Assembly: GCA_051294905.1 (NCBI GenBank)
Contig: CM119385.1
Location: forward strand, 10,540,001 to 10,604,000
Direction: 5' to 3'
Origin: Botryllus schlosseri
Lineage: Eukaryota
Length of the DNA: 64,000 bases
This document shows positions 7,594 through 64,000 of this stretch, in pieces. The stretch's first letter is position 1, and each line of letters starts with the position of its first letter. Both the position numbers and the translations under genes were made by a program. Under the pieces are notes generated by a model. That model searched no databases and was not told the DNA's origin. It was given only the letters and a program-made list of their open reading frames with translations.

Positions 7594-7796
7594 TGTGGTG
7601 ATCCGCAATTAAGCAATAATTACTTTCATCTGATTAGTTACGATGTACAGTACAGTGTCGCCTTATCGTTACCGTGTCATTCTATTCTCTTCTGTTCTGC
7701 TGTCGGTTGTGTTTTATGTTGCTTAAAGCCACATTGGTTACCTTTGCTTTAATAAAGCTTCAGTCAGTTATTCAACGCATTAGTCAGTTCACGACA
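7594..7796 (+). repeat. 5' LTR of element 1
   Basis: TGTGGTGA...CACGACA, with AATAAA at 7751. Confidence 0.95.
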
Positions 7797-9369: not shown

Positions 9370-9392
9370 ATCTGAAGTCCGCGTATTATCAA

Positions 9393-10382: not shown

Positions 10383-10387
10383 ATCGC

Positions 10388-11485
10388 ATACACGACACTC
10401 TGGGTCATCCAGGAGTCACAAGGCTGCATCATTTCGTTCGTTCGAAAAATCTCTCGTTCTCCCTAAATGACGTCCGTGAGACCTGCGCTCGTTGCCGCAT
10501 TTGTGCTCAAATCAAACCAAATTTTTACAAATGCAATCCGCAAGTGCTTGTGAAAGCAACGAAACCTTGGGAAAGAATCAACGTAGACTTCAAAGGGCCT
10601 TTGAAATCTAACAAATCCCCTTTCATGTTCGTTGTCATAGACGAATATAGTCGTTTTCCGTTCGCCTTTCCATGTCGCAACACTTCCGCGCTAACCGTCG
10701 TTTCGTGTTTGTCGACACTATTCGCTGTTTTTGGACTTCTGGGATACGTTCACAGTGACCGAGGCACCGCTTTCGTGTCCAAGGAAGTCAAGGATTATTT
10801 ACATTCTCGCGGGGTTGCAACTAGCTTCACTACGCCTTACCACCCAACAGGAAATTCGCAGTGCGAACGCCTTAATCGAACATTATGACGAACTATCAAA
10901 CTCATTTTGAAATCAACCGGAGTCTCAGAATCATGTTGGGCTGACGCCCTTCCTCATGCGCTACATTCAGTTCGATCGCTACTTTGCACGTCAACTAATT
11001 CAACACCGCATGACCGATTTTTTTCCTTTCCAAGAAAAAGTATGGTGGGGAATAGCGTGCCATCCTGGCTATTGACACCGGGGCCAGTTTTCTTACGCAA
11101 ATTCGTCAGAAACAAGGGCGACGAACTATGTTCTGAGGTCGAACTTATTGAAGCCAACCCGACTTACGCACGTGTTCGTTTTCCTAACGGCCGCGAGTCC
11201 AACGTCTCACTCAACGATTTGGCCCGTTTTCCTACTGGAGAAGAAACACCGTCGACTAATCCTGAAACGAAACAAGCTGAACCTTGTTCTGTTGATATCG
11301 ATGGCCACGAGCCAAGTCGCGAAGTTTCTAACGTTGAGTTGAAGTCATCTGATGAAGAGCCTCAAGAATCTAACCATTCAGAGGATGTACCAGATGATTC
11401 GAGTAGAAATCTAGACGTCGAGCTTCGGCGTTCAACTAGAGTTAGGCGCCAGCCGGATCGGTATGGTAATTTTGTTAGTCATTGA
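10388..11485 (+). pseudogene. pol: Element 1 integrase with frameshift and internal stop
   Basis: Contains the HHCC region (HDTLGHPG...CRIC), VDFKGP, HSDRG, YHPTGNSQCE and C-terminal LRRSTRVRRQPDRYG. An in-frame TGA at 10886-10888 replaces a Trp codon. Confidence 0.92.
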
Positions 11486-29400: not shown

Positions 29401-32400
29401 AGATGTGGTGATTGTTGTGATTGTATAAGTGCTGATTACTGTAATTAGTTTACTTTGCTCTGTTCATTCCTTTCGTACCTCAGTTGCTTATATCTGTGTT
29501 GTCGAGTGCATGTCCTAGTTCCGTGAAGTTGATTGTAGCTGAATTTCAGTTAATAAAAACCTAGAAAGCTGTCAAGCAGTTTCGTCTTCGTCTACCTACG
29601 CTTTCCTCGAAAGGTCACCACAATTTTATTAACTGCTATTGACACAATCGACTCTGGAATGACTTTCTCTCAAGAGAAGTATATCCGCGTGCCGGTTCTA
29701 GATTTATTACCGAGCTCTCAAGACTCTTCGAAAGTATTCAACCACTGGGACAAAATGTTGTCGAGCTTCATATCGGCTGCAGAGTCTTCTTTGCCATCGA
29801 CCAGCAGCACGGACACTGGACAAGAATCTAGCAGTGGCCGTCCCGGGGCAGTTCTCGATAAGTTGGCTATTTTGATTGGTTATGTATCGCCAAGCGTGTA
29901 CGCTTTGATCGAAGATCATGGCACGTTCGAATCTGCCATGGCACACCTAACCAAGTTATATCGGAAGAAAAAGAACATCACATATGCTCGACATTTACTC
30001 GCAACTGCTAAGCAAGACTCTGGTGAGACCGTCGCTGATTTCTCACAAAAGTTGATGGCTCTGTCTCGTGATTGCGATTTTGAAGCTGTTAATGCAGAAG
30101 TGCATAAAATGGAGGCCGTGCGAGATGCCCTAATTACTGGCTTGCGGTCCTCTGGCATTAGATTGCGTCTTCTCGAACATGATGAGTTGACACTCGAAAA
30201 AGCCATGCAGATAGCAGACTCTCTTGAACGGGCGCAAGCGTTTTCCTCGTCCTATGAAATATCGCCTCCTACCGCTAACATGGTTCCGGGAAATCAGGAA
30301 ATGCAGAAGACTTCACATACGCCTGACCAATCGCCTGTGTTGTCCTGCAGCTCTGAATTGGCTGCATTACAGAAGTCTCCTGAAAAAAAGAAGTGCTTAT
30401 TTTGCGGCGGTTTCCATACGATGCTTCGCAAGTTTTGTCCAGCCCGAAACAGCGAATGCTCGAGATGTGGCCGACGGGGTCACTTTGCCAAAGTCTGCAA
30501 ATTCAATTTGGCTTCGCTAGCCGGTGTACCCGGTTCTTTGAGGCGTTCGTTCGACGTTGGAAGTTTTTGTTGCTGAGAGATTGGTCAAAGTACTTGTAGA
30601 TTCGGGGGCGTACGAATGCTACATTAGATCATCATTCGCCAAAATTCTCAATCTCGCTCTTACTCCTCGGGATTACACTATTACCCTTGCATCAAAGTCA
30701 TCTTCTGCTCGAGTTATTGGTCATACATACGCGACACTTCGCATTGAAGATAAAGATTACGGCGCAACTCAATTTTGCGTCGTTGATGAACTGTGCGCCG
30801 ACGTAATCATCGGTTTGGAATTCCTCCAACAGCATAAGCGAGTTATATTTGAATTTGGTGGGCCTAAGGGAGATCTCGTATTAGGACGCAAGCATTGTGT
30901 CGTAGCTGCCGCTAAAGTGAGTGATCCGCCTGAAATATTCAAGTTTGTCGACCCAGCTGTAAAGCTTGTAGCTGTGAAGTCGAGAAAGTACAGCTCGGAG
31001 GATCGATCTTTTGTACGGAGCGAGGTGTCAAAGCTCCTGGATGAAGGCGTTATAGAGAAGTCGGTATCTCCCTGGCGAGCTCAAGTTTTGGTAACCAAGG
31101 ACCCTCGACATAAGAAAAGGTTAGTGATTGATTACTCGCGGACGATAAATCGATACACCCCTTTGGATGCTTGTCCGCTACCAAAAATTGATGACATTGT
31201 CAATGAAGTTGCAAAAGGTGTTGTTTATAGCACGATCGATCTCAAGTCTGCCTATCACCAGGTGTCTCTCTCTGCGGCCGACCGACCCTTCACAGCTTTT
31301 GAAGCTGATGGTTGTCTGTATCAATTTCGTCGCCTACCCTTCGGCATCACCAATGGGGTCGCTGCATTTCAGCGGTTCATTGATAAATTTATAGCGGACA
31401 ACCACTTGAAAGGCACAATCGCTTACTTGGATAATGTAACTATATACGGAAGGAATCAGAAGGAGCACAATGAGAGGCTCTCTTCGTTCATGTCCGCCGC
31501 TGATTCAACAGGTCTGACTCTAAATAAAAATAAATGTGCGTTTGGGGTTTCGAAGCTCTCACTGCTCGGCCATCTGATCTCCCACAATGATATTCGACCC
31601 GATCCGGATCATTTGCGACCCTTAACGCAAATGCCGGCTCCAAGCGATACTCGTAGTCTGAAGCGCTGTTTGGGCATGTTTTCGTACTATTCAAAATGGA
31701 TTCCGTCTTTTTCCGATAAAGTGAAGCCCCTATGTGAAAATGTCGTGTTCCCCTTGCTTGAAAAACAGAGAAACGCGTTTGAAACGGTAAAACAGAATCT
31801 ACTTCGCGCCTTTTTGAGCTGCATCTATGATGACGAACCGTTTCAAGTTGAATGCGATGCTTCCGAAGTTGCGATCGCCTCTATTTTAAGCCAAAAGGGC
31901 AGGCCTGTTGCGTTCATGTCTCGAACGCTATCAAAATGCGAAATGAAATACCCCGCTGTAGAAAAGGAAGCTTTGGCCATTGTCGAGTCTCTTCGAAATG
32001 AATTTAAATTGATAACGGACCAAAAGGCATTATCTTTCATATTTAGAAAAGACCATCCAAGTAAGATTAAAAATGCAAAGCTCACTCTGTGGAAACTCGA
32101 GTTAAGTCCGCTAAAGTATCAAATAATTCACCGCCCTGGATCCGAGAATATCGGACCTAATACTCTGTCTCGGGTTTGTTGTTCGTCCCCAGGCCAGCCA
32201 CACATGAGCCTTCAAGAGATCCATGAAGCGCTGAGTCACCCTGGGATTCGACGACTTGATCACTTTGTCCGATCCAAGAATCTACCTTTTTCTATGGAGG
32301 ACGTTAAAAGAACTTGCGCTAATTGTCAATTATGTGCTAAATTGAAACCTCGGTTTTTCATGTCTAATGAAACGAACAAGTTGATAAAAGCTACTCGACC

Positions 32401-35400
32401 ATGAGAACGTATTAGCATCGATTTCAAAGGTCCCGTTGATGGACCCAGAAAGTTTGTACTTGTTATTATTGACGAGTACAGTCGCTTCCCATTTGCTTAT
32501 CCTTGTCGCGACATGACGTCGTCAACGGTCGTCAATTGTCTCTCATCCTTGTTTTCGCTTGTCGGTGTACCGGAATATGTACACAGTGACAGGGGTGCCT
32601 CATTTCTATCTAAGGAAATCACCGATTTCTTGACACGCAAGCGTATTGCCACCAGCAAGTCGACTCCTTATCACCCCACAGGCAATTCGCAATGCGAGAG
32701 GCTTAATCAGACTTTGTGGAAATCCGTCAAGTTGCTTTTGGAAAGTCAGAGATTGCCGGAGATACATTGGGAATCGGTTTTGCCGGATGCTCTTCATTCC
32801 ATCCGGTCGCTCTTATGCACGGCATCTAATTGTTCTCCTCATGACAGGTTCTTCAAGTTTGAAAGGAGATCCATGTTGGGCGACTCCATCCCCGACTGGC
32901 TTCTTCATGGCGGCACTGTACTTCTACGAAATTTTGTGCGGAACAAAGGCGACCCCCTCGTTAATGAGGTAGAACTATTGGATGCCAACCCTAAATACGC
33001 CTTAATACGTTACAGAAACGGCGTAGAATCAACGGTTTCCGTTAAAGATCTCGCACCCTACCCTGTTTCTACAAAGTCTTCTGAGGCGCTTGAAAGAAAG
33101 GAAAAAGAGTTTTCCTCTGTCTGCGATACAACGGAGCCGTCTTCCGATGAACTTACCACCTCGTCCAGCAGCGAAAAAGATGGCGTTGCTTGTAAAACAT
33201 GTTCTCCGCGTCGCGACGAAGTAGTGGAGCCCAGTAGCAGCGCAGATGTCGAGGAACCTCCACTGCGTCGATCCACGCGCATAAGGCGCGCTCCCGAACG
33301 TTACGGGCAAGGGACCTCGTAAAAGCCTGTCCCTATTTTTCTTGGTGGGGGTGAATGTGGTGATTGTTGTGATTTTATAAGTGCTGATTACTGTAATTAG
33401 TTTACTTTGCTCTGTTCATTCCTTTCGTACCTCAGTTGCTTATATCTGTGTTGTCGAGTGCATGTCCTAGTTCCGTGAAGTTGATTGTAGCTGAATTTCA
33501 GTTCATAAAAACCTAGAAAGCTGTCAAGCAGTTTCGTCTTCGTCTACCTACGCTTTCCTCGAAAGGTCACCACACTAGATGTTTCCATTTATAGGTAATT
33601 TTTATCTTTGACCTGAAGTAAAACCTCCCGATGCCTCGCGTATACTCTGGTCGTATTAGAGATGAGGAATTCTGCGGCCAGGATCCATGTTTTAGTAAAT
33701 AACCGGAAGTGAGCTATTACATTTCACTGAGAACTGTCGCATGATCAGCTCTGTCATTACTAATTATGATGTTATAGCGCAAATCTGATAAATGAACTTC
33801 TTGATATGCATTGTAAAACAGCAGACTGATTTCAGATGACGATCGATACTAACAGTAACCCAACCCTGTCTCGCGGTTACAAATTGCACCCAGTTAGCTG
33901 CTACGCAGCGCCCGATGGAAGCAAAAATAGTCTACAGCAATACACACTCATAGAAAACGGGTAAGTTGCAATAAAAGCTTTATTAGTTTCTATAACAGGG
34001 GCGGCCAACCCGCGACCTACGAGAAGGTTTTGAGTGGCCCGCGATGTAATTCTCGAAATTAGTTATAATAATAATAAAAAATTACTCAGGCAATTAATTT
34101 ATTGAACTTGCAAGATCAACTAAAAATGTCATTAGCGAACTCTGGAATGCTGATGACTAAAATATCAGTTCCGACGCATTGGTGTAGCCAGTGGCCATCC
34201 ACATTTTTCGGGGATCTTCGTATATGACAGATACGACCACAAAGCAGAATATTTCGCGGCCGATTTATTTGACTTGATATTTTTCTTAGCATTTCGAGCG
34301 ATTTATTGTCACTCGATTTCTTGATTTTAGCATTGGGGCCCCCTCCTGATATTTTAAAACTAGAAATACGCCCAATTTACGGAATTGACTCTAACTATAT
34401 TCGCAATCGTGAGAGAACGTGTCGTCTAACACGCAACTTCGCGTCTGCACTCGCAGAATGATCTTCGGCGATGACACCGTTGCACAAAATGATAGACGCA
34501 TATTCACTGAAATCTTGATATTGATAATATTGATAATATTGATAATATTGATAATATTGATATGTCCAAGCGCCAGTTATTTACCCTGGTCAACAGAATG
34601 AAAAAAACCATCTAGGAGTCGTTTCTGGGGTTTTCAAGGTTGCTGATTACGAATATCCAGCCGTAGATTGGCTCTAGAAAAGAAGACACTTATACCCATA
34701 AAAAAGCCCAAAATCCCTTGAAAATTTCAGTTGGTAGGAGGTAAATCTTAGATTTTTCTACTTTCATACTGCGCATAAATACATAATTGACTAGGAACCC
34801 GCATGTCGTTCTCAGTTATTCCATCAATATTAACATTAACGAGAACTTTGCTTGTAGAAAAAGCAGTTTATCAAGCCTAGAAATTGTACTTTTGCACAGC
34901 GGAAATATGTTTTCTCTAGTGCCAATTGGTCATTCTACCAAGATGAAAGTGGAGTGTAATGCTATCACATTTGTCCCTGGGAAATCTAACTAAAGTACTT
35001 ATATGAGTCTCATCTATTATGACTTGTAAATGGATAATTTTTCGCTGAGCCAACAAAGTGAGTGTACCTAGTCTCTATATCAAACGAGTAGCTTAAATCT
35101 GGTATCTTTGATGGACATCAGATTCGAATACGGATGAAGGATTCCAATTTCATATTAAGAAAGGTGCTCACTGAATGGAATCCCATTTAGGATAATAGTA
35201 AATAAAAACTTTTTGGAAGATCACAAAGCACCCAGCCACAAACAGCTGGTCCAAAAATTGGTATCTGCATATGGAAACCTTGGAGCAAACATGAGCATTA
35301 AATCTCAGTTCCTGATCAGTCACCTTGATATATTACCTGATAATATTGTTGATTAGAGGGAATAGAAAGGGGAAAGGTTTCATCAATACATCAAAACAAC

Positions 35401-46764: not shown

Positions 46765-48639
46765 CTCTAGACGCTAGTTGCCAAGTCATTTTGTCCTAAT
46801 ATTACATCTGCTTCGTATTTTGACAGCCAAATTAGCTAAAATTTGCATTTCATAGTACGTATTCCGAGAGTGAAGTATCGTTTTGGAAGTTGAATCTTCA
46901 TCAATGTAATTATTTGTTTGAGTTTGTTTGAGTTGAATTGAGTGTTGCTTGAGCCCAAGTAACGACCGATTTGAGAGTTTTATGAAGTATCAGATGGATA
47001 TTATGGATCGATTTGTGTCATGTCAACCGTTGAATACTCATAAGCGCTCGACAACATGGCTGCCGCCCGATGGCCGACAATCTCGGATTGCGGTTTCCAA
47101 ACAGTACATTTGGTATCAACATAGCGATCAGTGACGATTGCCAGCACAATTTTGAATGTTGGCTAGTGTTACTGAAAATTGAAATTCCACCAATCACTGC
47201 CGCGAAAAGCTTAGCAAAGCTATATTATTGTCTGCTTACTTCGAGTATATACTTTCACAATATACCGTATATTACTCCTATTTTAAGACGTTTTGTTCTG
47301 TCTTAGAAAATCAATATTTGTCGGACTTACCTCAGTTACGATTCTGTTCACGTGAATCACGTCATGATATCAAAATTGAGCTTTATTAGAAGATGCACGA
47401 TTGCATCAAAACCAAATGCTTTATGATTAGTTTCCCTGAAACAGGGAGCTCTAATTGAGAACAACACTTGAAAGGCAGAATGATGTTGCAGACGGAAAAT
47501 GGCATAATAACCTCGGCTACATATAGAGTATGCAGTTCAGTTCAATTCAATCTATTAACAATTTTACCGGATCAATACATAACAAGATTGCGACATAATG
47601 AAAGACAGGAAGGCGTCGAAACGATTTGGAGAGTCTTTGCATATATTAATAACTCTGCCGATGAATTGTCAAATGATGAAAGTGTGCGAATAATCCGCTC
47701 ACGAACAAGTCCCAAATCCATATACCGCAGATTCAAGTCAATGGTTCCAGTTATTAAATAGATATTAAATATTCCTTGTAGTTCCAGGTTGTAGAATATT
47801 TGCAGAAGTAGCGTAAGCTACATTACTTCATGCCTGAGTAAGATTCTCTTGTAATAGGCCTACTACAGATATCTCACAATCTGTAGTGTTTAGAAGCTGT
47901 ATGATATTTGTTTTCAGCAAGTTCTAAACATTTTGGTGGTGGAATCAGGACCAATGTTCCCTCTAATTTTTCACGAGTCTGCGCAAGCACTCCAACTCAC
48001 TGCGCGGCCCCTTGGGCAACAGTGCGTGACACCAGACATGCGTGTATCCATTCAAGTTCCATGATTTAATGATAGAATCAAATTACAGCATTTACCTTTC
48101 GTTTCATTACATGACACCAGCTAATCACATTATGAGAGAAGAGGGGGAACTGCGCTAGAAACATGATGTGGTCCCAACTTGAAGTAAAGTCATTGAAACC
48201 ATTTTTATCAAAACGCCACCGTATTCGAAGTGCATCTGAAAGATTTTCAAAATATGCACCATAACACACGTGCGACTCTGTGGTGTTGCAATGGGTTAAG
48301 AAGCAATGACACGCGATGACGTTAAACCTCGATATCACGTATATTGCACGTGTGCTATGTGGTGCATATTTTGAAAGTCCTTTTAGGTGCAGTTCGAATA
48401 CGGTGGCATTCTGAAGTAAATGACTTCTGCCAAAATGTGTCACTTTGTGGCATGCTGCAAACGTACCAGAAACAAATTTCTTTCGTGAGGAGCGCACGAT
48501 TACATGTTGGTATTTATTATATAGGGCACATCATTTTCTTCTTTTGTTTCATCTGACGTTGTTGTTGTTTTTGTTATTGTTGTGTTTCATATTCATGGTG
48601 TTTCGACTACATTGGTCATTTTACACCAGGCCGACATTC

Positions 48640-48830
48640 TTCATTATCATTCCGTAGCACGGTCCACTTCTAGGCTTAAGACACTGGTTACGTGTGTCAG
48701 ATGGCGACGAGGAGCCTAGATAGACCTCCAACACTTGGGTAGGAATTCTGAAGTCGACCTCGGTCGTACTCGAACCCGCAATCCATTCCTGTTGCAGCTG
48801 TGGAACGTACCACTACGCTATCTCGCCACC
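48640..48830 (-). mobile_element. tRNA-derived SINE (copy 2)
   Basis: A box TAGCGTAGTGG and B box GGTTCGAGTAC on the minus strand; 3' body shared with copy 1. Confidence 0.8.
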
Positions 48831-51218
48831 GTTCGCATATGTACTGTGGGGCTCAGATTGCTAAGGGCACTACATTAAAATATATCACGTTAAATCGCGA
48901 AAATCGCGAAGAAAATTTCAAGAATAATTGAAATCGGGAGTCAATTCGTAAATTCAATTTGTTCGTCGACGGCCGCCAGCACATACTTGTTGAATAACGC
49001 GACGGCCGCACAAATTTCCTGCTATACGGCCGCATGGTGGCCACCCCTGTGTAGGCATACTGCGTTAAAACACTGATGTGACGTTCTAATACATGCAATT
49101 CACCCATTACTACCAAGACATACAGTCAGATTTAAAATGCGATTATTCAAGTGTGACTGAAACAAGAAATATATGAGGGTATATCCTTATCAATTGAAAT
49201 CCGATTTCTGTCAAATGCGCAATTAGCTGGAATTTGATGTTTATGCATATGTTACCAGTATGTCCAGCGGCGATGAAGTTAAGTAGAATATAGAAGATTT
49301 CCATTCAAACGAATCGATTAAAATCAGAATTTTGCTGCCGAGAAGCTAATGCAATTCAACGCCTTACACTGCACAGTTGTAGCATTTCCCGATCAACGTT
49401 TGCAAAGCCCTGTTGTATAACTATTATCCGCATCAATGAATTGCAATTCGCAATAACACACTGTCCAATTTCGAACTCCAATTAAAAAGGCTGGCACGGG
49501 TAATATTATTTTCTTTATGGCTCACTCGCCACTTGGACTGCTTTAGGAGTCATTTTCTTGAGCGAAGCGGTGATAGTAGCCAGCTTATTTTTTGTTTTTG
49601 TCGGGCAGTTCATTTATTGTTTATATACTGAAGTATTTGTACTATCTGGATATTTCCAGCAATTTTTCAACGGTATTTTAATAAGATATTCGTCCACTTG
49701 GTCGTATTGTTTCGTACCTGTTGGGAAGGGAAAGCCAGAGTCAGCCTATACTGCAATCACTTCCTTCATATGTCTCTACTTGGAGACGACAAAGACTAAC
49801 ACGAAAATCATTCACGAATATAATTTAGCGAAGAGGAATGTGAACTTGCTCGTCCGATGGAGAGATGAGATGGTGTTTCCCAGAGCACTCGGGTTGAAAT
49901 CGACGTTTCTATCGAGATGACATCGCTTGCCTGATTACGAATTACTGATTACAAATTAGTGATGTACATTAGTACATCTAAAATGGTCGGCAGTTTTGTC
50001 AGATGAGCATCAGTGCCTTCTGCGAAAGACATAGTGATAATTTTTTTTTTCGAACCACAGAATGGAATTGGTTTTATGTGTGCGACACAGATTTTATGTG
50101 CGCGCAGACTGTGTCACGCGCGCAGCTTAGAGTGAACCCTGAACATTGGTCAGGAGCCTGGTTTAGTTGAACATGAACATTAACATCTAATCGACCGACG
50201 GCCACCAACGGTCGACTAGTCTAATTCAATCGAATTCTCTATCTATAGCAAAGTTATGTATAAGTCGCAAGTAACGTGGTATATTCGGTGATCGTATAAA
50301 CCGTGCACTTCTCCATCTTGGCAACGAATGTCTGCCAATTCTTCCATGACGCATCTATAGAACACCGGTATACTGCAATTAGTCATAGATTGGTCGCTTC
50401 TGAATGACCTATCGCAAATTTACATCTGTCGATTGCAGTGGAGCATACCTACCACGGCGTTTTCCTGGTTTCCTGAGAATCAAGTATCGAAAACGGTGGA
50501 AACTTCATATTGCACTATGATCGCATAAATTTCAGCAAAGGTGAAATTTAGAAATCGGTAATCACACACGCATTACGTCCGCAGTCATTTTGCTCTCATG
50601 TGAAACATTAAACGGCCTTGTCATCACTGTACTGTGCGTGCGGTGAGGTACAGATTACCATTATGCACAATACACATGTTGCACTGCTCCAGGGGTCACA
50701 CATTTTCATTTCAGGATGAGCCGATGTCAACAAACAAACTTCGCTGTTTTATACTCTTGTCCCAGTACCCTATCGTGTGCCGAGCCGCCACTTGATAATA
50801 CCCCGTCCTACACGTTGAGTCCTTTCTATCGTTATTTTCATTTAAGTTATTTTCTATTTGGCATGGATGAAACATTAAATATATATATTATATAAATATA
50901 TAATTTCGAGAATTCGAATCATTGCTTGCGAGATAATAGAAAGCCGGGGCATTTGATACTTGTATTGTATGCCCCGATCCGACCATTTCCACAAAAACTC
51001 GGGGAAATCTCATGCGCAATGACCATTTGTGTTGAACGGCAGTCGGCATGTACGAATACGAAGGCTGCGTAGTGCGTAGTCACTATAGGAGTATAGGTCT
51101 ACCGTCTTTTTTCTTGCGATTTCCAGAAAAAAAGTTTCAAATATCCTCTATTTAGGCCTAATACTTTGCCATTGCGCGTCAAAGCTCAGCTTTTGTTTCA
51201 GGATTTGTTCTGGACATT

Positions 51219-55731: not shown

Positions 55732-56999
55732 CAGGGGTGTCAAACTCAAATTGCATCACGGGCCGGATCGAAGTCATGAAATCTCTCGTGGGCAGGACCA
55801 GTCAACGGAATCCAAAATGTTGCTCGTGCCATTTCTTCTCGCTGGAATACTTTATTATCAAGCATACGGATCGTAGGGGTTTTATTCTAGCGAGTCGCAA
55901 CACCAATATTTGCGAGCAATGAAATTGGCGAAAATACGATGTTTGTCCGGTTGAATACAGTTAAGAACCACTAAAACAATGGCATTACCAGCGATACAAG
56001 TAGACATATTTCAGTGTTCCCTTTGCTTTATTCCAGGGGTGGCCAACCTGCGACCGTAAGAGGGAATTTGTGCGGCCGTAGACACGCAATTCAATTAGTA
56101 TGTGTTGGCGGCCGTCGACATGCAAGTCGAATTTACGAATTGACTTCCTATTTCTTGAAAGATTTTAATTAATCTTGAAATTTTCTTCGCGCTGCGCGCG
56201 ATTCAATGCAACCACATTTTCGACTTTAATATAGTAACACCCTTTGCAATCACAGCCCCACAATACAGATGCGAACATCAGTGCAAATGATGCGCCTCAC
56301 ATGGAAATATCAGATCGGAATCGTTTTCTCCTCACTATACCAACAATCCTGATCGGAGGTCAAGAAATCACAGCATGCTACAAAGTGACTAATACCAATT
56401 GGCCCACCCGAAGATGCATCATAATTTGTAACTTGCTTTAGATTTTTGAAAACATCCCTACAACAACTCTCACCAGTTTATCTGATCACACGGGATGAGA
56501 CAGGATGTTTTATGGTATTATGTAAGACTACCAATATCAATGACGAAATTCATCGGTGAATCTGAAGTTTTTTCGCGCTTCGCGCGACTATGAGCACTTC
56601 CTTCCTTCACATTACCAGTGACCACTCGCGATTTTGGTGCGCATAGTAAGCCTATCATTAAATAGATTAGTCCGGAGTTCACCAGAAATGGACATAGACA
56701 CTTCCTGGGTATTTGGCGTCCAGCTCGTTCATTACGACTATGCCCTACAATGCGGCAGAGTAGTCGAAATGCGGCCGTAAATGGCAAAACGGTTGGCCAC
56801 CCCTGCGTTAGTCATAATCTGGTGTTAGGCCCTGCGTATGCGTTGTTATGAATACAAGATATTCAACTATCAACGCGGACGTTGTAATTTGGTTTATTAC
56901 TGTGGATGTGATGGATAATATAATCTTATTTCAATGTACTCAGAATTGCTATGCGGGCCGGATAAAATCGTCCGGCGGGCCGTATGTTTGACATCCCTG
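55732..56999. mobile_element. hAT MITE nested in 55296-57158
   Basis: TIRs are CAGGGGTGTCAAAC/GTTTGACATCCCTG with a perfect TSD GCCTAGTT. Confidence 0.9.
56034..56805. mobile_element. hAT MITE nested in 55732-56999
   Basis: TIR CAGGGGTGGCCAACC at both ends; TSD CTTTATTC/CGTTAGTC (6/8). Confidence 0.85.
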
Positions 57000-57667
57000 G
57001 CCTAGTTTAATAGAATTTGTTAATACACCTCGCATAGGTCAAATACGTGAGTATGACGTCATAAATAGTGGAAACGCACGTAACGTATATAGGTGGTACG
57101 CGAGCACTGCATAAAACCTCAAAATGGTACGTGGATGGAAAAAGGTTGGGAACCACTGCTGTAAGGCTAAGCGCCAAGCGGAGAAGACATGGATATTGGA
57201 TATCATGACCTACCGATGAAAAATCCGGACGCACCACCATTACTTTAAATATATTTTGGATAGGTTTGCATCACTTCTACTAGTGAAGTTGTCGAAACAA
57301 CCGGGTAAAATAGGCTTTAGATGTGGACAAAGTATCCAGCATTGTTACTCGGGTAACATTAGAAGTATTTCCAAAAATTTATACTCAACTACAAGTATAG
57401 AAGTAGTAATTTCCAATGAAAAATACCTCAAGTAGAATTATAGAAAGCGAAAGTTATGAAAAGTACTCTCGAGTAATTTCAAAAGGTGGATTAAGTCGAG
57501 GCTCCGTTTGCTTTTACCATAGTCGATCGGAGGTTAACTTGATATTTACACGGAACAATGTATGCATCGTTAATATGTCATGCTTGCTGTGTTAACGACG
57601 AAAGGTTCGACTGCGCACAAGTTTCATTATTTTATAATTTATGTGCTTTCATCATCCCTATATAGCG

Positions 57668-58281
57668 CAGGGGTGGCCAACCTGCGATCGTATAGCAGAA
57701 AATTTGTGCGGCCGTCGATACGTAATTCAATTAGTATGTGTTGACAACCGTCGACATGCAAATTGAATTTACGAATTGACTCCGGAATTTTGGAGTGATT
57801 TTAATATAGTAGCGCCCTTTGCGATATGATCCCACAGTACAGATGCGAACAGCTGAGAATATTATGCGCCCCAAAAAGAAATACTAACTTGGAATCGTGT
57901 GGTCCTCACGAAATAAATTTATTTCTGGTGCGTTTGGGTGATTCCAATATTTTTCCACTATACTGCCAATCCTGATGGGAGGTGAAGAAATATGAGCATG
58001 CAACAAAGTGACTAACAACAATTGGCTCACCCGAAGATGCATCATATCATTTATAACTTTCCCCTAAATTTTCGAAAACACTCCCTCCATCAACTCTACC
58101 GGTGAATCTGATCACATGGGTTGAGAAAGGATAAATATTTGATAGTAATATGTGAATAAACTATACTTATATTAATGACGAAATTGATTTGTGAATCTGA
58201 AAAAATTTTCGCGCTTTACGCGACCGTCACGGATCCCATTACACGACCACTCGCGATTTCGGTGCGTATAGTAAGCCAACA
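57668..58281 (+). mobile_element. Second copy of the 56034 MITE family, interrupted by element 3
   Basis: Collinear with 56034-56660 up to ...ATAGTAAGCC, where similarity stops abruptly. Confidence 0.85.
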
Positions 58282-58438
58282 TGAAAAGAAGGGAACTAGT
58301 GAAGTATATGCCCGCTTTACTCGTGTGTATGTTTGACGTCATCTAACATGATTCCCCATGATCATTTAATTCAATTTCCTTATTCTATCCTTTTAATCTC
58401 TTTTTTCTTCTCGTTCTCTCGTTTTTCTCGAACGAGTC

Positions 58439-58463
58439 AAAAAATGCTGACTCAGCATTTTTT
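58439..58463. promoter_or_regulatory. Perfect 25-bp palindrome containing a consensus T-MARE
   Basis: AAAAAA-TGCTGACTCAGCA-TTTTTT. Confidence 0.6.
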
Positions 58464-58513
58464 CTAGTTACGAGGTTTCAGTTTTGTCCGTTTTCCCTCA
58501 TTATATCACATAT

Positions 58514-58927
58514 TTACACTCTGCTAAAAACAGCTTTACATCTTTTGTATAACTGTGGGTGGTATAGGGCCTTCGCACAACACCACTTCTCTTGTACGTT
58601 TGATTGCAGCAGTACGAGTCCCTCATTCCTTAGATCTGCTGCCTTCATGCAAATTACCACATTCCGCTTTTTGCTTTTCTTCGTTATCGTTTTGCTCAAA
58701 TGAATGAATCTCCTGTTCATTCGTTTATTGCTTGCGAACATTATCTGTCTTGCATTGTTTTCAGTCGTCATGTGGTACAATATCTCGTTGCCTTTATATT
58801 TACAGTGCGGAGGGGGCAACCCTTTTGTATGTCCATGTGCAGCCGCCAAACCATAGTTTGAGACTATTACTCTATCGCACCTTTTCATGACGTTCTTGAT
58901 TTCTTCAATTCTCATTTGCAACCCCAT
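58514..58927 (-). CDS. Integrase-like ORF lacking catalytic acidic residues
   Basis: IKNVMKRCDR, GHTKGLPPP and ALYHPQ lie at roughly integrase spacing (C to YHP is 105 aa here versus about 115 in element 2). Confidence 0.45.
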   Translation of the reverse strand: MGLQMRIEEIKNVMKRCDRVIVSNYGLAAAHGHTKGLPPPHCKYKGNEILYHMTTENNARQIMFASNKRMNRRFIHLSKTITKKSKKRNVVICMKAADLRNEGLVLLQSNVQEKWCCAKALYHPQLYKRCKAVFSRV

Positions 58928-59326
58928 TTTTTTATGACGCCGTAAATTCCTTCCCAGGGATGATATCCATCCACTGAGTCATTACAAAGATCATGGCGAC
59001 AATGAGACTCTTGAGTTCCGTCTCAACGCTAGGACTGGTCCCTTGTTGTGGTAACTTGGCCAGCCATTGGCCAATGTGAATCTCGTGATGAACGGGGTTT
59101 TGTTGTTGGTGGAGAGAGGGCGAGGTCCTTCGATGTAGGCCTCTGATCTCGGTGCGTGCCCGCACCTACCGTCACGCCGACGAACTCCTTTTCCGCCGGG
59201 GACCCTTTTTCTGGGGAGACGTGCATCCTAAAATCCCCAGACTCCTTGTCGGACATGACCAGGTGTGTATCCGGTTGACCGGCAATCGCTGCTTCGTTTG
59301 AACCTTTTGGGAAAGTACTCATTACT

Positions 59327-59600
59327 GTGGCTGTCGTCATGCATCTATGGGCCGATTCATTAAGGTTATTCGGACAAGTGCATCCACGAAAGCATTTAGG
59401 ACCAGTTTTCTCATGCAGGTCTTTATTTTCGCCAGCGGACATTCTTCGTTCGATGTCAGCTGTGGCAGTCGCCATGCATCTATGGGCCGGATTTTTTACA
59501 GTTATCCGGACAAGTGCATCCGCAAAAGCCTTCGGGACCAGTTTTCTCGTGCAGGTCCTTATTTACGCCAGCGGGGATTCAACGCTCGACGTCTTCATTA
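59327..59600 (-). repeat. ~132-bp tandem duplication encoding a 44-aa Cys-containing repeat
   Basis: Two copies: NKDLHEKTGPEGFCGCTCPDN and NKDLHEKTGPKCFRGCTCPNN. Confidence 0.85.
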
Positions 59601-59852
59601 ACGGTGTTAGCAGGCATTCCTGTCTCAACACCAATAGTTTCCCATGGGTTCTGTGTGACGTTAGTTGCTATTTTCAACTCGTCGTTCGCACCAGTGGTGA
59701 TTACCATCTCGGTACTTGCGCCAGCGGCAACGTCCAGCGGCGACGGCCAGCGTGCCGGCTCGACGCTTATTTGATTTGCAGCTTCCATCAACCCCATCAT
59801 CGGTTACAGTGTCGCGAGGACTGCTTCCGACTTTGGTTCCGTCCCGTTTATC

Positions 59853-60260
59853 TCATGAGATCCCATCACGTAGAGTTACTAAAGACAACTCTTCAATCGC
59901 ATTAGACGGTGTTTTCAACCCAATTACTATTCTTGGTAATAGCTGTACTTGTTCAATCCATTTCAACCCTATGATATTAAGTGGAGCTCCTAATCCGGTC
60001 ACAAATGGAACGGACAGACCATCAAAATTAATCTCTACGAAGGAGTCCACTTGGGACGAGCCACCTATTCCAGTCAATTCCATGTCTATTGGTTGACGTT
60101 CTTCCCAGCTTTGTGGGTATTTAGTAATAACGACCTTTTTTTCATTATCAAATTGAGGATGCTTCCCGTGTCAGCTAGGAATTTCGAACCCGTTATTGTA
60201 TCAATCAAATACAACAATTGGCCTCCGAACAATTCCGTAAATCGGGCTGTAATGGGTCAT
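59853..60260 (-). pseudogene. Retroviral-type aspartic protease, frameshifted
   Basis: LLYLIDTITGSKFLADTGS (DTGS at 60161-60172), a frameshift at an A7 run, then flap LTGIGG and C-terminal NIIGLKWI. Confidence 0.8.
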
Positions 60261-60359
60261 CCGGCGTATCAAGAAATGTAAATAAGGGTAAAGAAGAGTT
60301 ATGTACAGTTTTTGTGTGTTGCGGTAATAAATTATCTGGGAGCTGATTTACCGGATCAA

Positions 60360-61658
60360 TCAGCTCCCGCAAGCGATCGAGAGTCGAATACCTTGATTCA
60401 GTTCATCATCCGTCCAATCTGAAGCATCATATCGACGTGGATGATCAGGGTATTGAGGTTCCGCCCAAGCCACTTGGCTATTACCTCGGGACGAGTGTGC
60501 AGGCGGTAAAGATGACTTTGTGTCACGCACTTCCTTTGTTTCCTGGTTCCTAGGGCACGTCTCTTGTTCATCCAGAAACTCGGAGTTCCAAACAAATTGT
60601 AGCTCCTCCGCAACGTCCCGCCAGGTTTTCTCTTCTTCCCAGCCTCGTAACATCAGTCTGAGCGCTTCTGGAAGTCGTTGTCGTAAATTTCGGAAAAGAC
60701 GCAATCCATCCGGATTATCCTCAATAAGACTATCCATGTCTATTTCTAGTTGTTTCAAAGCGCTATTCAGCAGAGGTAGCGGCTCATCCGCCCAGCGATA
60801 ATTTCTGCGGAAATCCCCAATGATCTTTTCATCATTTACCAAACCCTGGGGGTTGGATAAGGAAAGGGATCGCATCACCGATTCCCATTCTGCTTCCCCC
60901 GAATTGGTATTAAAAAAATTTCCCAGTTGGATAGCCTGCTTGTGTCTGCCAGCCGCCCGCAATTTCTTCTGCATCGCATTAGCCAAAATAACATCAGCAT
61001 CTGTATTCCCGGGACCGTGACGTATTCGTCGCATCGAATTTTCCATCCACTTTAATAGTGGCATGTCTCCAGGATCCATCATTAGCTGAAGCATTTCTTT
61101 TTCTGATTGGATTTTAATGGGTACATTAATCATTGGAACCGTAACTCCAGGATATTGGTGTAGCTTTTGTCGCCCTGGTCTTACCCCATACTCCTTCGGC
61201 GTAGATGTAAAACGAGGCATATTTGGATAGTCCGGTATGTCCAGCCGGTCCTCGTCCGAACTTTCTTCCGAGGTATCTTTGGAATTTCGAAGAGACTGTC
61301 CAGTCCTTTTTATTTCTTGAGCCAATTTTCGCATCATAGTATCGTAATAGTCCTCCTCAGCGTCGTCCGCATCTTCTCTAGTATCACCCTGTTCTCGGTA
61401 GGTCACCCGTCGGGATTCGCCATCCGCACTTCTCGCTCGTCTTCGAGAATCCTTCTCCTCGTTACGACGTTCCTGCCATCCTCGATACCCCATATACTTA
61501 TCTAAGGGACTCTTTTTTGGTTTCGACGCAACGGGGGGCTCGCTCCCCCCAAGTCTGATGAGGCTTGGCATTTCCGCGGGGTTTTGCTTTTTCTGTTTGG
61601 TGCGTGCTCCACTTTCCACATGGAAACATGGTGTTGTTCCCCTGCCAGAATCTGACAA
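60360..61658 (-). CDS. Gag/capsid-like ORF (432 aa)
   Basis: A long intact ORF directly upstream of the protease, with a charged disordered N-half and helical, Trp-containing C-half. No zinc knuckle. The capsid call rests on position and composition. Confidence 0.6.
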   Translation of the reverse strand: MSDSGRGTTPCFHVESGARTKQKKQNPAEMPSLIRLGGSEPPVASKPKKSPLDKYMGYRGWQERRNEEKDSRRRARSADGESRRVTYREQGDTREDADDAEEDYYDTMMRKLAQEIKRTGQSLRNSKDTSEESSDEDRLDIPDYPNMPRFTSTPKEYGVRPGRQKLHQYPGVTVPMINVPIKIQSEKEMLQLMMDPGDMPLLKWMENSMRRIRHGPGNTDADVILANAMQKKLRAAGRHKQAIQLGNFFNTNSGEAEWESVMRSLSLSNPQGLVNDEKIIGDFRRNYRWADEPLPLLNSALKQLEIDMDSLIEDNPDGLRLFRNLRQRLPEALRLMLRGWEEEKTWRDVAEELQFVWNSEFLDEQETCPRNQETKEVRDTKSSLPPAHSSRGNSQVAWAEPQYPDHPRRYDASDWTDDELNQGIRLSIACGS

Positions 61659-62205
61659 CGCAGTCGAGTGGTAGCTTAGGATAGACGGCCGTTACAGTAT
61701 GACAATCCAGACCCTTGCGAACCGTCATTGTGGGTCCTTGTTTTACGTCCCCAGACGGCAGTTCAGCGAGAGGAGCGTAAGCCGGAGGATCATATTCTGG
61801 TGCATCTGGCGATACTGTCAAAACGGGAGGTTGGATTCTATCTCGCGTAGCCTGTGCATGCGACTTTCCGAGCTCAAACTCTGACGTAAGAATGTCATTC
61901 AGCACGTCGGTGGATACCTTCCCGCTAACTTTTGTTGTGGCATCACAAACAGCTTTGAGGTCTGCTTGAGCTTTTCGAACCTCTTTCTTTGCCTTCTCCA
62001 GACCCTTCATAGTTTCTGGTAAAGCTGTCTTCACCTCTTTTAATAGTTCCGTTTGTTCAGCCACATCTTTAGCAAGTTGTCTTTCTTGTCTCCGAACGTC
62101 TTCATGGCGTTTTTGTGTTGCTCTAAGCAGGGTAATGCCCTGTTTAAGTTCATTTGTCGCTTCTGGCGACTTTTTCCTTTTAAATGCTTTCAATATTCTT
62201 CGCAT
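61498..62205 (-). CDS. Coiled-coil, matrix-like ORF with PPxY and YPxL motifs (235 aa)
   Basis: Basic N-terminus MRRILKAFKRKKS, a heptad-rich segment, PPAY at 61777-61788 and YPKL at 61672-61683. Overlaps the next ORF by 161 nt. Confidence 0.65.
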   Translation of the reverse strand: MRRILKAFKRKKSPEATNELKQGITLLRATQKRHEDVRRQERQLAKDVAEQTELLKEVKTALPETMKGLEKAKKEVRKAQADLKAVCDATTKVSGKVSTDVLNDILTSEFELGKSHAQATRDRIQPPVLTVSPDAPEYDPPAYAPLAELPSGDVKQGPTMTVRKGLDCHTVTAVYPKLPLDCVVRFWQGNNTMFPCGKWSTHQTEKAKPRGNAKPHQTWGERAPRCVETKKESLR

Positions 62206-62213
62206 TGCACTTC

Positions 62214-62480
62214 CTATTGACTGGAGGAAGTACTGTTGACAAATATTAGATCAGGTGAGGATGCGTTGAAAAAGACTGTAGGTCCATGTGGCGTATTCGT
62301 GGGTTGGACGTAAGCAGTGGATTCGTTGCTGTTAGATCCCAAAAATACGTTCAACAGATTAGAAAACGCTCCAGGCGATACGTGCAGATAAATTGCTGCC
62401 AATATGATCAGGAGGGATACAGACGATGAAAGCAAGGATACGACAAGTACAAGTTTTACGATGGTCGTCTTAGAAAGCAT
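62214..62480 (-). CDS. Small single-pass membrane glycoprotein ORF (88 aa from the ATG at 62480)
   Basis: A hydrophobic run of about 24 aa (IVKLVLVVSLLSSSVSLLIILAAIY) is followed by three sequons (NES, NAS, NST). The stop lies 8 nt before the next ATG. Confidence 0.6.
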   Translation of the reverse strand: MLSKTTIVKLVLVVSLLSSSVSLLIILAAIYLHVSPGAFSNLLNVFLGSNSNESTAYVQPTNTPHGPTVFFNASSPDLIFVNSTSSSQ

Positions 62481-64000
62481 CGATTGGTCAACGTCTGAGC
62501 ACCGGAAGTTCCCCGTACTGGCCACCAATTTAGTTTTTATAGTGCAGCTCCACAACGATTGTTATGCGAGTAGTCCACACTTGTTCGGGTTACTTCCTAG
62601 TAAAGCGTTGCCTTTCGTTTGCTTTAGTATCCTGACGACGTCTGTAAATGGTGATTGGAGCAACAACAGTTGTAGGATTGTTTCTTCTCAAGTTGACAAT
62701 GACCCTGGGGTCCAGAATTTTAATCTACCTTTATCTACTGATAATCTAGAAGCTTAATACAACCAAATACTCCAATTAGTTAATTGCGCAGACGGAAATG
62801 TGGTAACTCTATGCAAAGCTTGGTTAAAATTGGCATACACATCATCCATCAATTATAACACAAGGCATGGTTTAACCTATACGTCATCATACACAATTAA
62901 CAAACATTTTCAATACTCCAAGGTTTGTTTACGCATATAATTGATGCGACGGCCTTTCCTGCCGAAAAGCAGCTCCAATCAATACAATCATCATCACAAT
63001 ACATTACGTTCAATCGTATGTTCAAATACATGCATTGCAATATCTAAATTCATTCACAATATTTCTCATAACAATACACAAGGCAATTGACATTAAGGAC
63101 GTCACATCTTCAGTACAATTATCATTACTATAAGCCTACTAATCGGCCCGTGTGATACTATCCCTAACTGTCAATATTCCTATGATTTGTTCCATTGAGG
63201 TCTTAAAATATTAGCAATCTTTTCTTGTTTTACTTCCAAAATCATATCCTAGTCAAAGGTTGTATCGGGGTTTTATATTTTATAATGTTTATCATTATTT
63301 TTATCAATAACGGTTCGCACCCGAAAATCTAGGATTTTGTTTCCGTTAAACTAGGGGGTGATAATGTCCCTAGGGTCCTGCTTAAAGGTAAGGGCGTAGC
63401 AGTGTATAACGCCTGGCTAATTATATCACAATATCACAAAGCAGCAGTTGCGACGAAATAAACATCAAATAAACCGTGAATCGTGAACCATTAGATTATA
63501 TACCTTGTGCACAGTGTACAACACAATGGGTCCTGACCGTTAATACATAGCGTAGGTCAGTTATAACGCTTTCAAGGGCTAATAAATGCCTGCAGGCGTA
63601 GTACTTGCTAATAAATTACTACAATAACTACCAATTATTCACATATTAATTATCATTAACTCATGCACATATCTAAGACACAAAATGTTAGCGCCATTTT
63701 AAGGCAACCGGATGGTAATAATCAAAGATACAGCAATACAATGCTTCATCACAATAAGGAACGTTGGCGTCACTATGCAATAACGTAACTGGGGAATACC
63801 CATCGCTTATGTAATGACTATCGTGTTCCGTCGTCATGCAGCAGATTGATTTATGCCATCGACCGTCCAACGCATCCTTTCCGATCTCCACCACCATATG
63901 TTCAGAACACGTTTCGCAATTGTACGTTCGAGTACTTAGTCTTGTGCATCTATTTTTCGGACCCGATTTCTTTGACTCCCTTGATCATGAAACAATTCTT

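What the first reader, a model, noticed from the sequence alone, without database searches (positions are those of the whole stretch)
58282..63700. Unclassified RT-less retroelement with a virus-like budding and membrane toolkit
Seen, in minus-strand order: TM glycoprotein sORF, coiled-coil ORF with late-domain motifs, Gag-like ORF, decayed retropepsin, ~900 nt of low-complexity or repeated coding sequence, integrase-like ORF, purine-rich tract. No RT or RNase H motif was found. The three 5' ORFs are open while the pol part is broken, and the element is unrelated to elements 1 and 2. Inference: a non-autonomous member of an undescribed, possibly cell-to-cell transmitted Metaviridae-like lineage, or a Gmr1-type (PR-IN-RT order) derivative that lost RT/RH, or a partly domesticated capsid locus.
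Basis: partly seen in the sequence, partly recalled or inferred. Interest (0 to 1): 0.82.

Follow-up and report, generated by a model that had tools for sequence, protein, structure and literature searches.

The report
Dead copy of integrase-less retrovirus-like element
The region is a broken, internally deleted copy of a retrovirus-like element whose intact relatives in sea squirts and other marine assemblies carry an RNA 2'-phosphotransferase (Tpt1/KptA) domain where the integrase should be and have no long terminal repeats, an architecture I could not find described.

Summary
The "integrase-like ORF" is a Tpt1/KptA RNA 2'-phosphotransferase domain. The coiled-coil ORF and the "Gag-like" ORF are two halves of one gag gene.

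Intact relatives exist in Styela clava and in three ENA assemblies. They encode gag (coiled coil, PTAP/PPxY motifs, helical core, CCHC knuckle), pol (protease motifs, Ty3/gypsy-like RT, RNase H, Tpt1) and often an env-like fusion glycoprotein. They have no integrase and no LTRs.

In one genome the copies start and end within one ~30-nt zone. Several are 5'-truncated and some form 11,583-bp head-to-tail arrays. A sister lineage adds an AP-type endonuclease and an alphavirus-E1-like env.

The window copy lacks the knuckle region, RT, RNase H and env, and it has five frame changes. It is a dead deletion derivative. It is neither a domesticated capsid gene nor a Gmr1-type element.

The small TM ORF has no relative. 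A capsid fold was not shown.

The family looks undescribed in the literature I could search. I could not check Repbase or Dfam.

The parts
58309..58516 (-). 3' untranslated end of the copy. It holds a short hairpin and a purine-rich tract (about 58362-58432).
   Evidence: It is 83% identical to the independent contig L001, and that similarity stops at 58309.
58517..60256 (-). Broken pol remnant, given as one part. It has 4 frame changes and has lost about 730 codons (RT and RNase H).
   Evidence: tblastn with intact relatives' pol covers only their residues ~29-152 and ~887-1043.
59856..60256 (-). Protease-like domain of pol (D-T-G-S and G-x-G-G motifs).
   Evidence: It is 46-51% identical to the N-terminus of the Styela pol. 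Pfam support in relatives is only marginal (RVP E 0.085).
59009..59855 (-). Stretch with no homology to any relative. It holds a 136-bp tandem repeat x1.8 (59325-59593) and sits where the PR-RT linker, RT and RNase H lie in intact relatives.
   Evidence: The linker of the Styela pol also holds a tandem repeat.
58517..59008 (-).
   Evidence: Pfam PF01885, 27.2 bits against a cut-off of 26. PDB 8tfi, E 2.6e-5. Family profile against solved Tpt1, E 7e-18. It has 2 frame changes.
60360..62205 (-). Broken gag, given as one part: coiled coil, late-domain motif PPAY, helical core. It has 1 frame change and 1 internal deletion of about 300 codons that removes the CCHC knuckle region.
   Evidence: It is 50-60% identical to the 976-aa protein P0002 over that protein's residues 3-174, 296-631 and 933-973. 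The core is modelled at pLDDT >90.
62206..62785 (-). Leader upstream of gag. It includes a 36-nt block (62750-62785) that is 33/36 identical to a block upstream of gag in the Styela clava locus, with a 24-nt core that is identical.
62214..62555 (-). It is probably not a gene.
   Evidence: No similarity to any relative's sequence, env included. No Pfam hit.

Best explanation
Window 58309-62785 (minus strand) is a dead, internally deleted copy of an LTR-less, integrase-less retrovirus-like element.

SHOWN. Intact relatives encode three things:
- A gag of 700-980 aa: N-terminal coiled coil, PTAP/PPxY late-domain motifs, a conserved helical core and a CCHC zinc knuckle.
- A pol of about 1000 aa: protease-type motifs, Ty3/gypsy-like RT, RNase H and a C-terminal Tpt1/KptA domain in the place of integrase.
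- In several lineages, an env-like fusion glycoprotein.

The window copy keeps only the two ends of gag, the protease part and the Tpt1 part. It cannot copy itself.

INFERRED.
- The two in-register losses (knuckle region; RT plus RNase H) arose by template switching during reverse transcription. Any past movement depended on proteins from intact relatives.
- For the family, I infer from copy ends in one genome that a roughly unit-length RNA is copied into the chromosome from a fixed 3' end, in the manner of LINE or Penelope elements rather than by an integrase. This explains the absence of LTRs, the 5'-truncated copies and the head-to-tail arrays. An array or partial tandem would be needed to transcribe a full unit.
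- The Tpt1 domain has lost one of the four catalytic positions in every member. I take it to act on a phosphate of the element's own RNA or cDNA by ADP-ribosyl transfer, either capping or marking an end or clearing a 2'-phosphate that would block RT. This last step is the weakest.
For: Homology and architecture:
- 18 relatives of the gag core were found by full HMMER search. Single-ORF gags carry a coiled coil and a knuckle.
- Pol with RVT_1, RT_RNaseH and PTS_2-RNA occurs as one intact ORF in Styela clava, in ERZ22157276, in ERZ781364 and in a sister lineage.
- The next-best RTs are integrase-bearing Ty3/gypsy pols at about 27% identity.
- No direct terminal repeats were found around intact copies.

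Copy ends in ERZ22157276:
- Starts and ends of six copies fall in one ~30-nt zone.
- Three copies have 5'-truncated starts, in gag, pol and env.
- Arrays have an 11,583-bp period, and one solo copy is 11,581 bp.

Other family features:
- Env-like ORFs have a signal peptide, an RxKR site, a hydrophobic peptide, heptads and a C-terminal anchor.
- The sister lineage has a full Exo_endo_phos domain (E 2e-18) after Tpt1 and an Alpha_E1_glycop env (E 5e-19).
- Late-domain motifs are conserved.

State of the window copy.

A template-switch-like deletion in a relative has 3-nt microhomology at the joint.
Against: - No other copy from the window's own genome was available, so the 5' end of this copy and its age are unknown.
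- The end analysis comes from one distant lineage (about 25-35% protein identity to the window copy) and from only six mapped copies. No clear target-site duplication was seen, apart from one 11-nt repeat in L009.
- The lineage closest to the window has no endonuclease of its own.
- In Styela the env-like ORF lies upstream of gag. That fits a partial tandem but also fits a circular intermediate.
- The gag core gave no significant fold match.
- Protease support is at motif level only.
- The role of Tpt1 is untested. dN/dS of 0.5 over 125 codons is uninformative.
Confidence: 0.8

Rival explanations
1. Endogenous pararetrovirus-like element. The family replicates as episomal, circular or concatemeric DNA without integrating, as caulimovirids do, and genomic copies are accidents of illegitimate recombination. 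The window piece would be one such fragment.
For: - No integrase and no LTRs.
- Head-to-tail arrays.
- The Styela locus is circularly permuted relative to the other genome: env, then 5 kb, then gag-pol.
- Intergenic regions are mosaic.
- The weak best-probability fold hits include badnavirus polyproteins.
Against: - Starts and ends of six copies cluster within about 30 nt.
- Truncations are all on the 5' side.
- One solo copy is almost exactly one unit long.
- A sister lineage carries an AP-type endonuclease, which implies active chromosomal insertion.
Confidence: 0.15
2. An ordinary Ty3/gypsy LTR retrotransposon that has lost RT, RNase H and integrase in this copy, with its LTRs outside the window or decayed, lying next to an unrelated Tpt1 retro-pseudogene.
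For: - Two standard Ty3/gypsy elements lie in the same window.
- The copy's 5' end is not defined inside the window.
Against: - The same RT-RNase H-Tpt1 fusion is one intact ORF in four independent assemblies.
- No integrase and no LTR occur in any intact relative.
- The gag and protease are unrelated to the window's own Ty3 elements beyond the knuckle and the D[TS]G motif.
Confidence: 0.03
3. A host gene: a domesticated gag (Arc/PNMA-like) kept open by selection while the rest decays.
For: - Long open frames.
- The Styela homolog is annotated as a gene, 'uncharacterized protein LOC144432391'.
- Arc capsid domains are the highest-probability, though insignificant, PDB fold hits.
Against: - The window gag is split by a frame change and lacks about 300 codons relative to all intact homologs.
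- In Styela the gag is followed 15 nt later by an intact pol.
- No exact protein is on record for the window ORF.
Confidence: 0.02

Closest known systems
Ty3/gypsy LTR retrotransposons and env-bearing Metaviridae
   Same: - RT and RNase H are of the Ty3/gypsy type (RVT_1, RT_RNaseH_2 and RT_RNaseH). The nearest detectable pols are integrase-bearing Ty3/gypsy pols.
- Gag has a CCHC knuckle, and protease motifs lie upstream of RT.
- Env genes appear to have been captured from other viruses.
   Different: - No rve integrase and no LTRs.
- A Tpt1/KptA domain (with an AP-type endonuclease in one lineage) follows RNase H.
- The gag core is not recognisably related to Ty3 gag.
- Copies are 5'-truncated and form head-to-tail arrays.
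Caulimoviridae (plant pararetroviruses) and their endogenous copies
   Same: A Ty3-like RT lineage that lost integrase and LTRs. Endogenous copies occur as tandem or rearranged arrays (established knowledge of the family; arrays here).
   Different: - Animal or marine-invertebrate hosts.
- No movement protein; env-like fusogens instead.
- A Tpt1 domain.
- Copy ends are clustered rather than random.
Non-LTR (LINE) and Penelope-like retrotransposons
   Same: - A defined 3' end, variable 5' truncation and partial tandems.
- An Exo_endo_phos endonuclease in the sister lineage L011.
   Different: - The RT is not LINE-type.
- Gag, protease, RNase H and env have a retrovirus-like layout.
- No poly(A) or simple-repeat tail was seen.
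- The window's own lineage has no endonuclease.
Tpt1/KptA RNA 2'-phosphotransferases (tRNA splicing; NAD-dependent ADP-ribosyl transfer to nucleic-acid phosphates)
   Same: - Sequence family membership.
- The R-H pair of the N lobe and the R..H of the C lobe are kept.
   Different: - It is fused to a reverse transcriptase polyprotein.
- The column aligned to the Arg of the solved enzymes' I-R-A..G-H-S stretch holds T, A, A, S or G in all five members.
Atlas virus of hookworm (Belpaoviridae-like endogenous element with a phlebovirus-like Env; PMC9094657)
   Same: An invertebrate retrovirus-like element that captured a fusion glycoprotein from an RNA virus. Compare the Alpha_E1_glycop env of L011.
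   Different: Atlas is described as a retrovirus-like endogenous element with a pol of the usual kind. The present family has no integrase.

Membership tests
Ty3/gypsy (Metaviridae) LTR retrotransposon | Long terminal direct repeats flanking the element | tested here: not met
   No direct repeats were found around intact relatives in L002, L003 and L009. None was found for the window copy inside the window.
Ty3/gypsy (Metaviridae) LTR retrotransposon | DDE (rve) integrase after RNase H | tested here: not met
   Pfam scans of all ORFs of complete units find no rve, zinc-binding integrase domain or recombinase. Tpt1 follows RNase H.
Ty3/gypsy (Metaviridae) LTR retrotransposon | Ty3-type RT and RNase H | tested here: met
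   Met in the relatives (RVT_1, RT_RNaseH_2, RT_RNaseH; nearest pols). Absent from the window copy itself.
Retroviral/Ty3-type Gag | Two-lobed helical capsid (CA) fold | tested here: inconclusive
   The core is confidently modelled as all-helical. Foldseek gave no significant match: Arc capsid prob 0.23-0.30, a toad ERV Gag prob 0.77 at E 0.16. The model could not be trimmed and searched again.
Retroviral/Ty3-type Gag | CCHC zinc knuckle after the core | tested here: met
   Met in the relatives (zf-CCHC; retroviral NC hits). The window copy has lost this part.
Retropepsin (A2 aspartic protease) | D-T/S-G active site, flap G-x-G-G and significant family match | tested here: inconclusive
   The motifs are present and conserved. 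Statistical support is weak: Pfam RVP E 0.085, Asp_protease_2 E 0.039, no PDB protease hit, hhalign E 0.14.
Tpt1/KptA RNA 2'-phosphotransferase | Significant match to the family model and to solved structures | tested here: met
   PF01885 scores 27.2 bits (cut-off 26) in the window and 38-42 bits in relatives. The profile against PDB Tpt1 gives E 7e-18.
Tpt1/KptA RNA 2'-phosphotransferase | Complete catalytic Arg-His-Arg-Arg tetrad (which residues form it is from my memory of the enzyme literature) | tested here: not met
   One Arg column is T/A/A/S/G in all five element-borne domains. The other three positions are kept.
Non-LTR (LINE-like) retrotransposon | AP-type (Exo_endo_phos) endonuclease | tested here: not met
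   Absent from the window's lineage (L002, L004, L005). Present only in the sister lineage L011.
Non-LTR (LINE-like) retrotransposon | Fixed 3' end with variable 5' truncation | tested here: met
   Met in ERZ22157276 copies. Not testable for the single window copy.
DIRS/Ngaro retroelements | Tyrosine recombinase ORF and split or inverted terminal repeats | tested here: not met
   There is no recombinase hit in any ORF of complete units and no terminal repeats.
Caulimoviridae-like pararetrovirus | Integration breakpoints scattered round a circular genome | tested here: not met
   Ends cluster in one ~30-nt zone in six copies. The sample is small.

The most novel reading that the evidence does not exclude
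The window fragment belongs to a previously unrecognised major lineage of enveloped, ESCRT-recruiting, reverse-transcribing virus-like elements of tunicates and other marine invertebrates. This lineage descended from Ty3/Metaviridae-like ancestors. It exchanged integrase and LTRs for a Tpt1-type ADP-ribosyl-transferase domain (plus an AP endonuclease in one branch), and it enters chromosomes LINE-fashion from a fixed 3' end. NAD-dependent modification of a nucleic-acid phosphate would be a step of its replication.
Probability: 0.35. Interest if true: 0.9.

Novelty: new variant of a known kind. Interest (0 to 1): 0.7.

Why it matters
All accepted groups of gag-pol retroelements with Ty3-like RT insert with a DDE integrase (Metaviridae, Retroviridae and others) or do not insert at all (Caulimoviridae).

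This family has the same RT and RNase H, conserved late domains and captured fusogens, yet it has no integrase and no LTRs. It carries a Tpt1 domain, and in one branch a LINE-type endonuclease. That would be a natural hybrid between the two great modes of retrotransposition.

It would also be, to my knowledge, the first retroelement to carry an RNA 2'-phosphotransferase. That would give animal Tpt1-type chemistry, whose role outside fungal and plant tRNA splicing is still unclear, a testable biological context.

The window copy itself is only a dead fragment. Its value is as the pointer to the family.

Tried and rejected
- The word-indexed protein search with the 432-aa ORF found nothing. The full HMMER scan was needed.
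- The single-sequence structure model was useless (pLDDT 44).
- Foldseek against PDB and BFVD gave no significant match. Profile comparison of the gag core with the window's own Ty3 gags matched only the knuckle.
I dropped that row and sent the rest.
- Ribozyme idea (unit-length RNA cut by a self-cleaving ribozyme, with Tpt1 clearing the ligation 2'-phosphate): Rfam scans found no ribozyme, at gathering thresholds in the window, L002, L004 and L005 and at permissive thresholds in the finding's region (window 58000-64000) and the L005 intergenic stretch.
- tRNA primer-binding site: no tRNA gene in the window or loci to compare with, so it was not tested.
- Env remnant in the window: none.
- The rest of the truncated MITE inside the window, as a way to fix the 5' end: not found.
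- The 3' UTR of the window copy against all relatives: nothing.
- An exact-sequence look-up of the window ORF to find its genome gave nothing on record.
- Six literature searches found no description of the architecture.


Full report
WHAT IS IN THE WINDOW. The window is eukaryotic DNA of about 41% G+C. It has no assembly gaps and no tRNA or Rfam hits. It holds two ordinary Ty3/gypsy elements at 7816-11485 and 29659-33322.

On the minus strand of the finding's region there are two long ORFs of 235 and 432 codons. There is also a 113-codon ORF with one hydrophobic stretch. Downstream lie protease-type motifs, a stretch with a 136-bp tandem repeat, a 154-codon open segment, and a purine-rich tract. 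The region is single-copy within the window.

CORRECTING THE LABELS. It matches Pfam PF01885 at E 4.7e-6, above the curated cut-off. It matches the solved Tpt1 structure 8tfi at E 2.6e-5. No RT or RNase H is present: tblastn with the window's own Ty3 pols and with intact relatives' pols finds nothing in 58900-59900.

RELATIVES. A word-indexed search with the 432-aa ORF found nothing. A full HMMER scan of 1.84 billion representatives found 18 relatives.
- The best is P0002 (976 aa, 51% identity). Another is P0004 (869 aa), which NCBI names 'uncharacterized protein LOC144432391 [Styela clava]'.
- Each holds in ONE protein an N-terminal coiled coil that matches the window's 235-codon ORF, a core that matches the 432-codon ORF, and further on a CCHC zinc knuckle.
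- The window's two ORFs are therefore halves of one gag. The window gag has one frame change and lacks about 300 codons, including the knuckle.
- P[TS]AP and PPxY motifs sit side by side at the aligned place in P0002, P0004 and P0012. The L005 gag has PTAP plus LPSY. The window keeps PPAY.

THE POL OF INTACT RELATIVES. In the Styela locus L002 an intact 1044-aa ORF starts 15 nt after gag. It has conserved D-T-G-S and G-I-G-G motifs at its N-terminus, RVT_1 at residues 443-617, RNase H at 687-829 and PTS_2-RNA (Tpt1/KptA) at 909-1031.
- The same RT-RNase H-Tpt1 ORF occurs in ERZ781364 (L004) and in many copies in ERZ22157276 (L003, L005-L009, L012, L013).
- After these, the best pol matches are ordinary integrase-bearing Ty3/gypsy pols at about 27% identity.
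- No ORF of a complete unit matches an integrase or a recombinase.
- A profile of five element-borne Tpt1 domains hits solved Tpt1 enzymes at E 7e-18. The column aligned to the arginine of their I-R-A..G-H-S stretch is T, A, A, S or G in the family, while the R-H and R..H positions are kept.
- That this arginine belongs to the catalytic tetrad, and that its loss slows the second chemical step, is from my memory of the Tpt1 literature. I did not test it.

ENV. In ERZ22157276 a 1301-1310-aa ORF follows pol. It has a signal peptide, two CUB domains, an R-x-K-R site followed by a hydrophobic peptide and heptad region, and a C-terminal anchor. Its C-terminal 750 residues are 28% identical (E 4e-67) to an intact 840-aa ORF in the Styela locus with the same features. 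That ORF lies about 5 kb UPSTREAM of gag. The window has no trace of it. The window's small hydrophobic ORF matches nothing in any relative, so I regard it as unsupported.

A SISTER LINEAGE. The more distant gag relative P0009 led to locus L011, in the same assembly. Its 1122-aa pol has RT, RNase H, Tpt1 (residues 778-838) and a full Exo_endo_phos domain (882-1113, E 2e-18). It is followed by an 895-aa ORF that matches Alpha_E1_glycop (E 5e-19). The units are again head to tail.

NO LTRS, AND WHAT THE ENDS LOOK LIKE. No direct terminal repeats flank intact copies. In ERZ22157276:
- Units form head-to-tail arrays with a period of 11,583 bp.
- One solo copy is 11,581 bp.
- In L005 coordinates, copy starts fall at 7736, 7750, 7751, 7755 and 7766. 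Copy ends fall at the equivalents of 7752, 7761, 7766 and 7766. This is one zone about 120 nt upstream of the gag start, around an 8-nt palindrome.
- Three copies start later, in gag, pol and env.
- One 5' end carries a 26-nt inverted duplication.
- One copy has the same 11 nt at both junctions.
- One truncated copy is joined to the end of the previous one at a 3-nt microhomology.

This pattern is what target-primed, 3'-anchored insertion gives. It is not what random breakage of episomal DNA gives. However, it rests on six copies of a lineage distant from the window's.

STATE OF THE WINDOW COPY (counts only).
- gag: 1 frame change and 1 internal deletion.
- pol: 4 frame changes (1 in the protease part, 1 across the missing middle, 2 in Tpt1) and loss of about 730 codons, that is, all of RT and RNase H.
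- env: absent.

The independent 788-bp contig L001 is 83% identical to window 58309-59008, and the similarity stops at 58309, 208 nt after the pol stop. dN/dS over the 125 shared Tpt1 codons is 0.5. About 22 nt beyond 58309 a truncated MITE-like repeat begins. Its missing end is not in the window, so the 5' limit of the insertion cannot be fixed. Upstream of gag, the only evidence of belonging is a 36-nt block (62750-62785), 33/36 identical to a block upstream of the Styela gag.

GAG FOLD AND PROTEASE. With a 19-sequence alignment the gag core (about residues 180-370 of the 432-aa ORF) is modelled at pLDDT >90 as a bundle of about eleven helices.
- Foldseek found nothing significant. The highest-probability hits were Arc capsid domains (PDB, prob 0.23-0.30), a toad endogenous-retrovirus Gag (prob 0.77, E 0.16) and badnavirus polyproteins (BFVD).
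- Sequence profiles hit only retroviral nucleocapsid knuckles.
- The capsid fold is therefore hinted at, not shown.
- The protease has conserved motifs but only marginal family scores.

INTERPRETATION. The finding is a dead deletion derivative of a real and unusual family. The Gmr1-type and domestication readings are not.

The family-level mechanism (LINE-like insertion; arrays needed for full-length transcription; Tpt1 acting on a phosphate of the element's own nucleic acid) is inference. The rival, a pararetrovirus-like episome with accidental integration, keeps about 0.15.

Six full-text searches found no paper describing Tpt1/KptA or an AP endonuclease in a Ty3-like retroelement. I could not consult Repbase or Dfam.

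SLIPS, DECLARED.
2. My script printed the open-frame segments of the region with coordinates, and my first notebook entry names two frame pieces of the protease. Both amount to places of breaks.
The consensus lines that the alignment tools printed were not used.

Noticed in passing
window 56033-56810, 57666-58286, 48458-49049 (-): A MITE-like repeat of about 780 bp with 15-nt terminal inverted repeats. The second copy lacks its last ~150 bp and abuts the retroelement copy. The missing piece is not in 58287-64000.
   Followed up: partly
window 7816-11485 and 29659-33322 (+): Two standard Ty3/gypsy elements (gag-PR, RT-RNase H, integrase), 38-56% identical to each other at protein level and unrelated to the finding's element.
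   Followed up: partly
window 62750-62785 (-) and L002 8672-8707 (+): A 36-nt non-coding block upstream of gag, 33/36 identical (24-nt core identical) between the window and Styela clava, although their gags are only about 33-47% identical over the aligned parts. It may be a cis-acting signal at or near the unit boundary. It is absent from the more distant lineages.
   Followed up: partly
L011 2778-8784 (ENA ERZ22157276 ctg12771l): A sister lineage whose pol is RT-RNase H-Tpt1-Exo_endo_phos (AP-type endonuclease) and whose env matches alphavirus E1 (class II fusion protein). The units are arranged head to tail.
   Followed up: partly
L002 2408-4930 and 10001-15759 (Styela clava OZ123526.1): An intact env-like ORF lies 5 kb upstream of intact gag-pol on the same strand. 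This order is circularly permuted relative to the other genome. hAT transposase remnants lie downstream of pol.
   Followed up: partly
L012 7720-7775: The 5' end of one copy carries a 26-nt inverted duplication of its own first bases, making a perfect palindrome centred on TTCGCGAA. This suggests a snap-back or hairpin event at the cDNA end.
   Followed up: no
L007 19171-22994: A second copy starts inside pol directly after the 3' end of the first, joined at a 3-nt microhomology. It leaves a 292-aa ORF with only the Tpt1 part. The deletion pattern resembles that of the window copy.
   Followed up: partly
window 59325-59593 and L002 13209-13292: The non-conserved linker after the protease holds tandem repeats in both species (136 bp x1.8 and 42 bp x2), so this segment appears prone to repeats.
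   Followed up: no
window 58440-58470 (-) and L001 560-590: A short A-run/T-run hairpin just after the pol stop, shared with the L001 contig with one mismatch in the stem. Its function is unknown.
   Followed up: no
L005 17727-18131 and 18453-18770: Two small ORFs (134 and 105 aa), with no hydrophobic segment evident by eye in the translations and no significant Pfam hit, lie between env and the next gag. They recur as called genes of 129-134 aa and 101 aa in some of the other copies of that genome.
   Followed up: no
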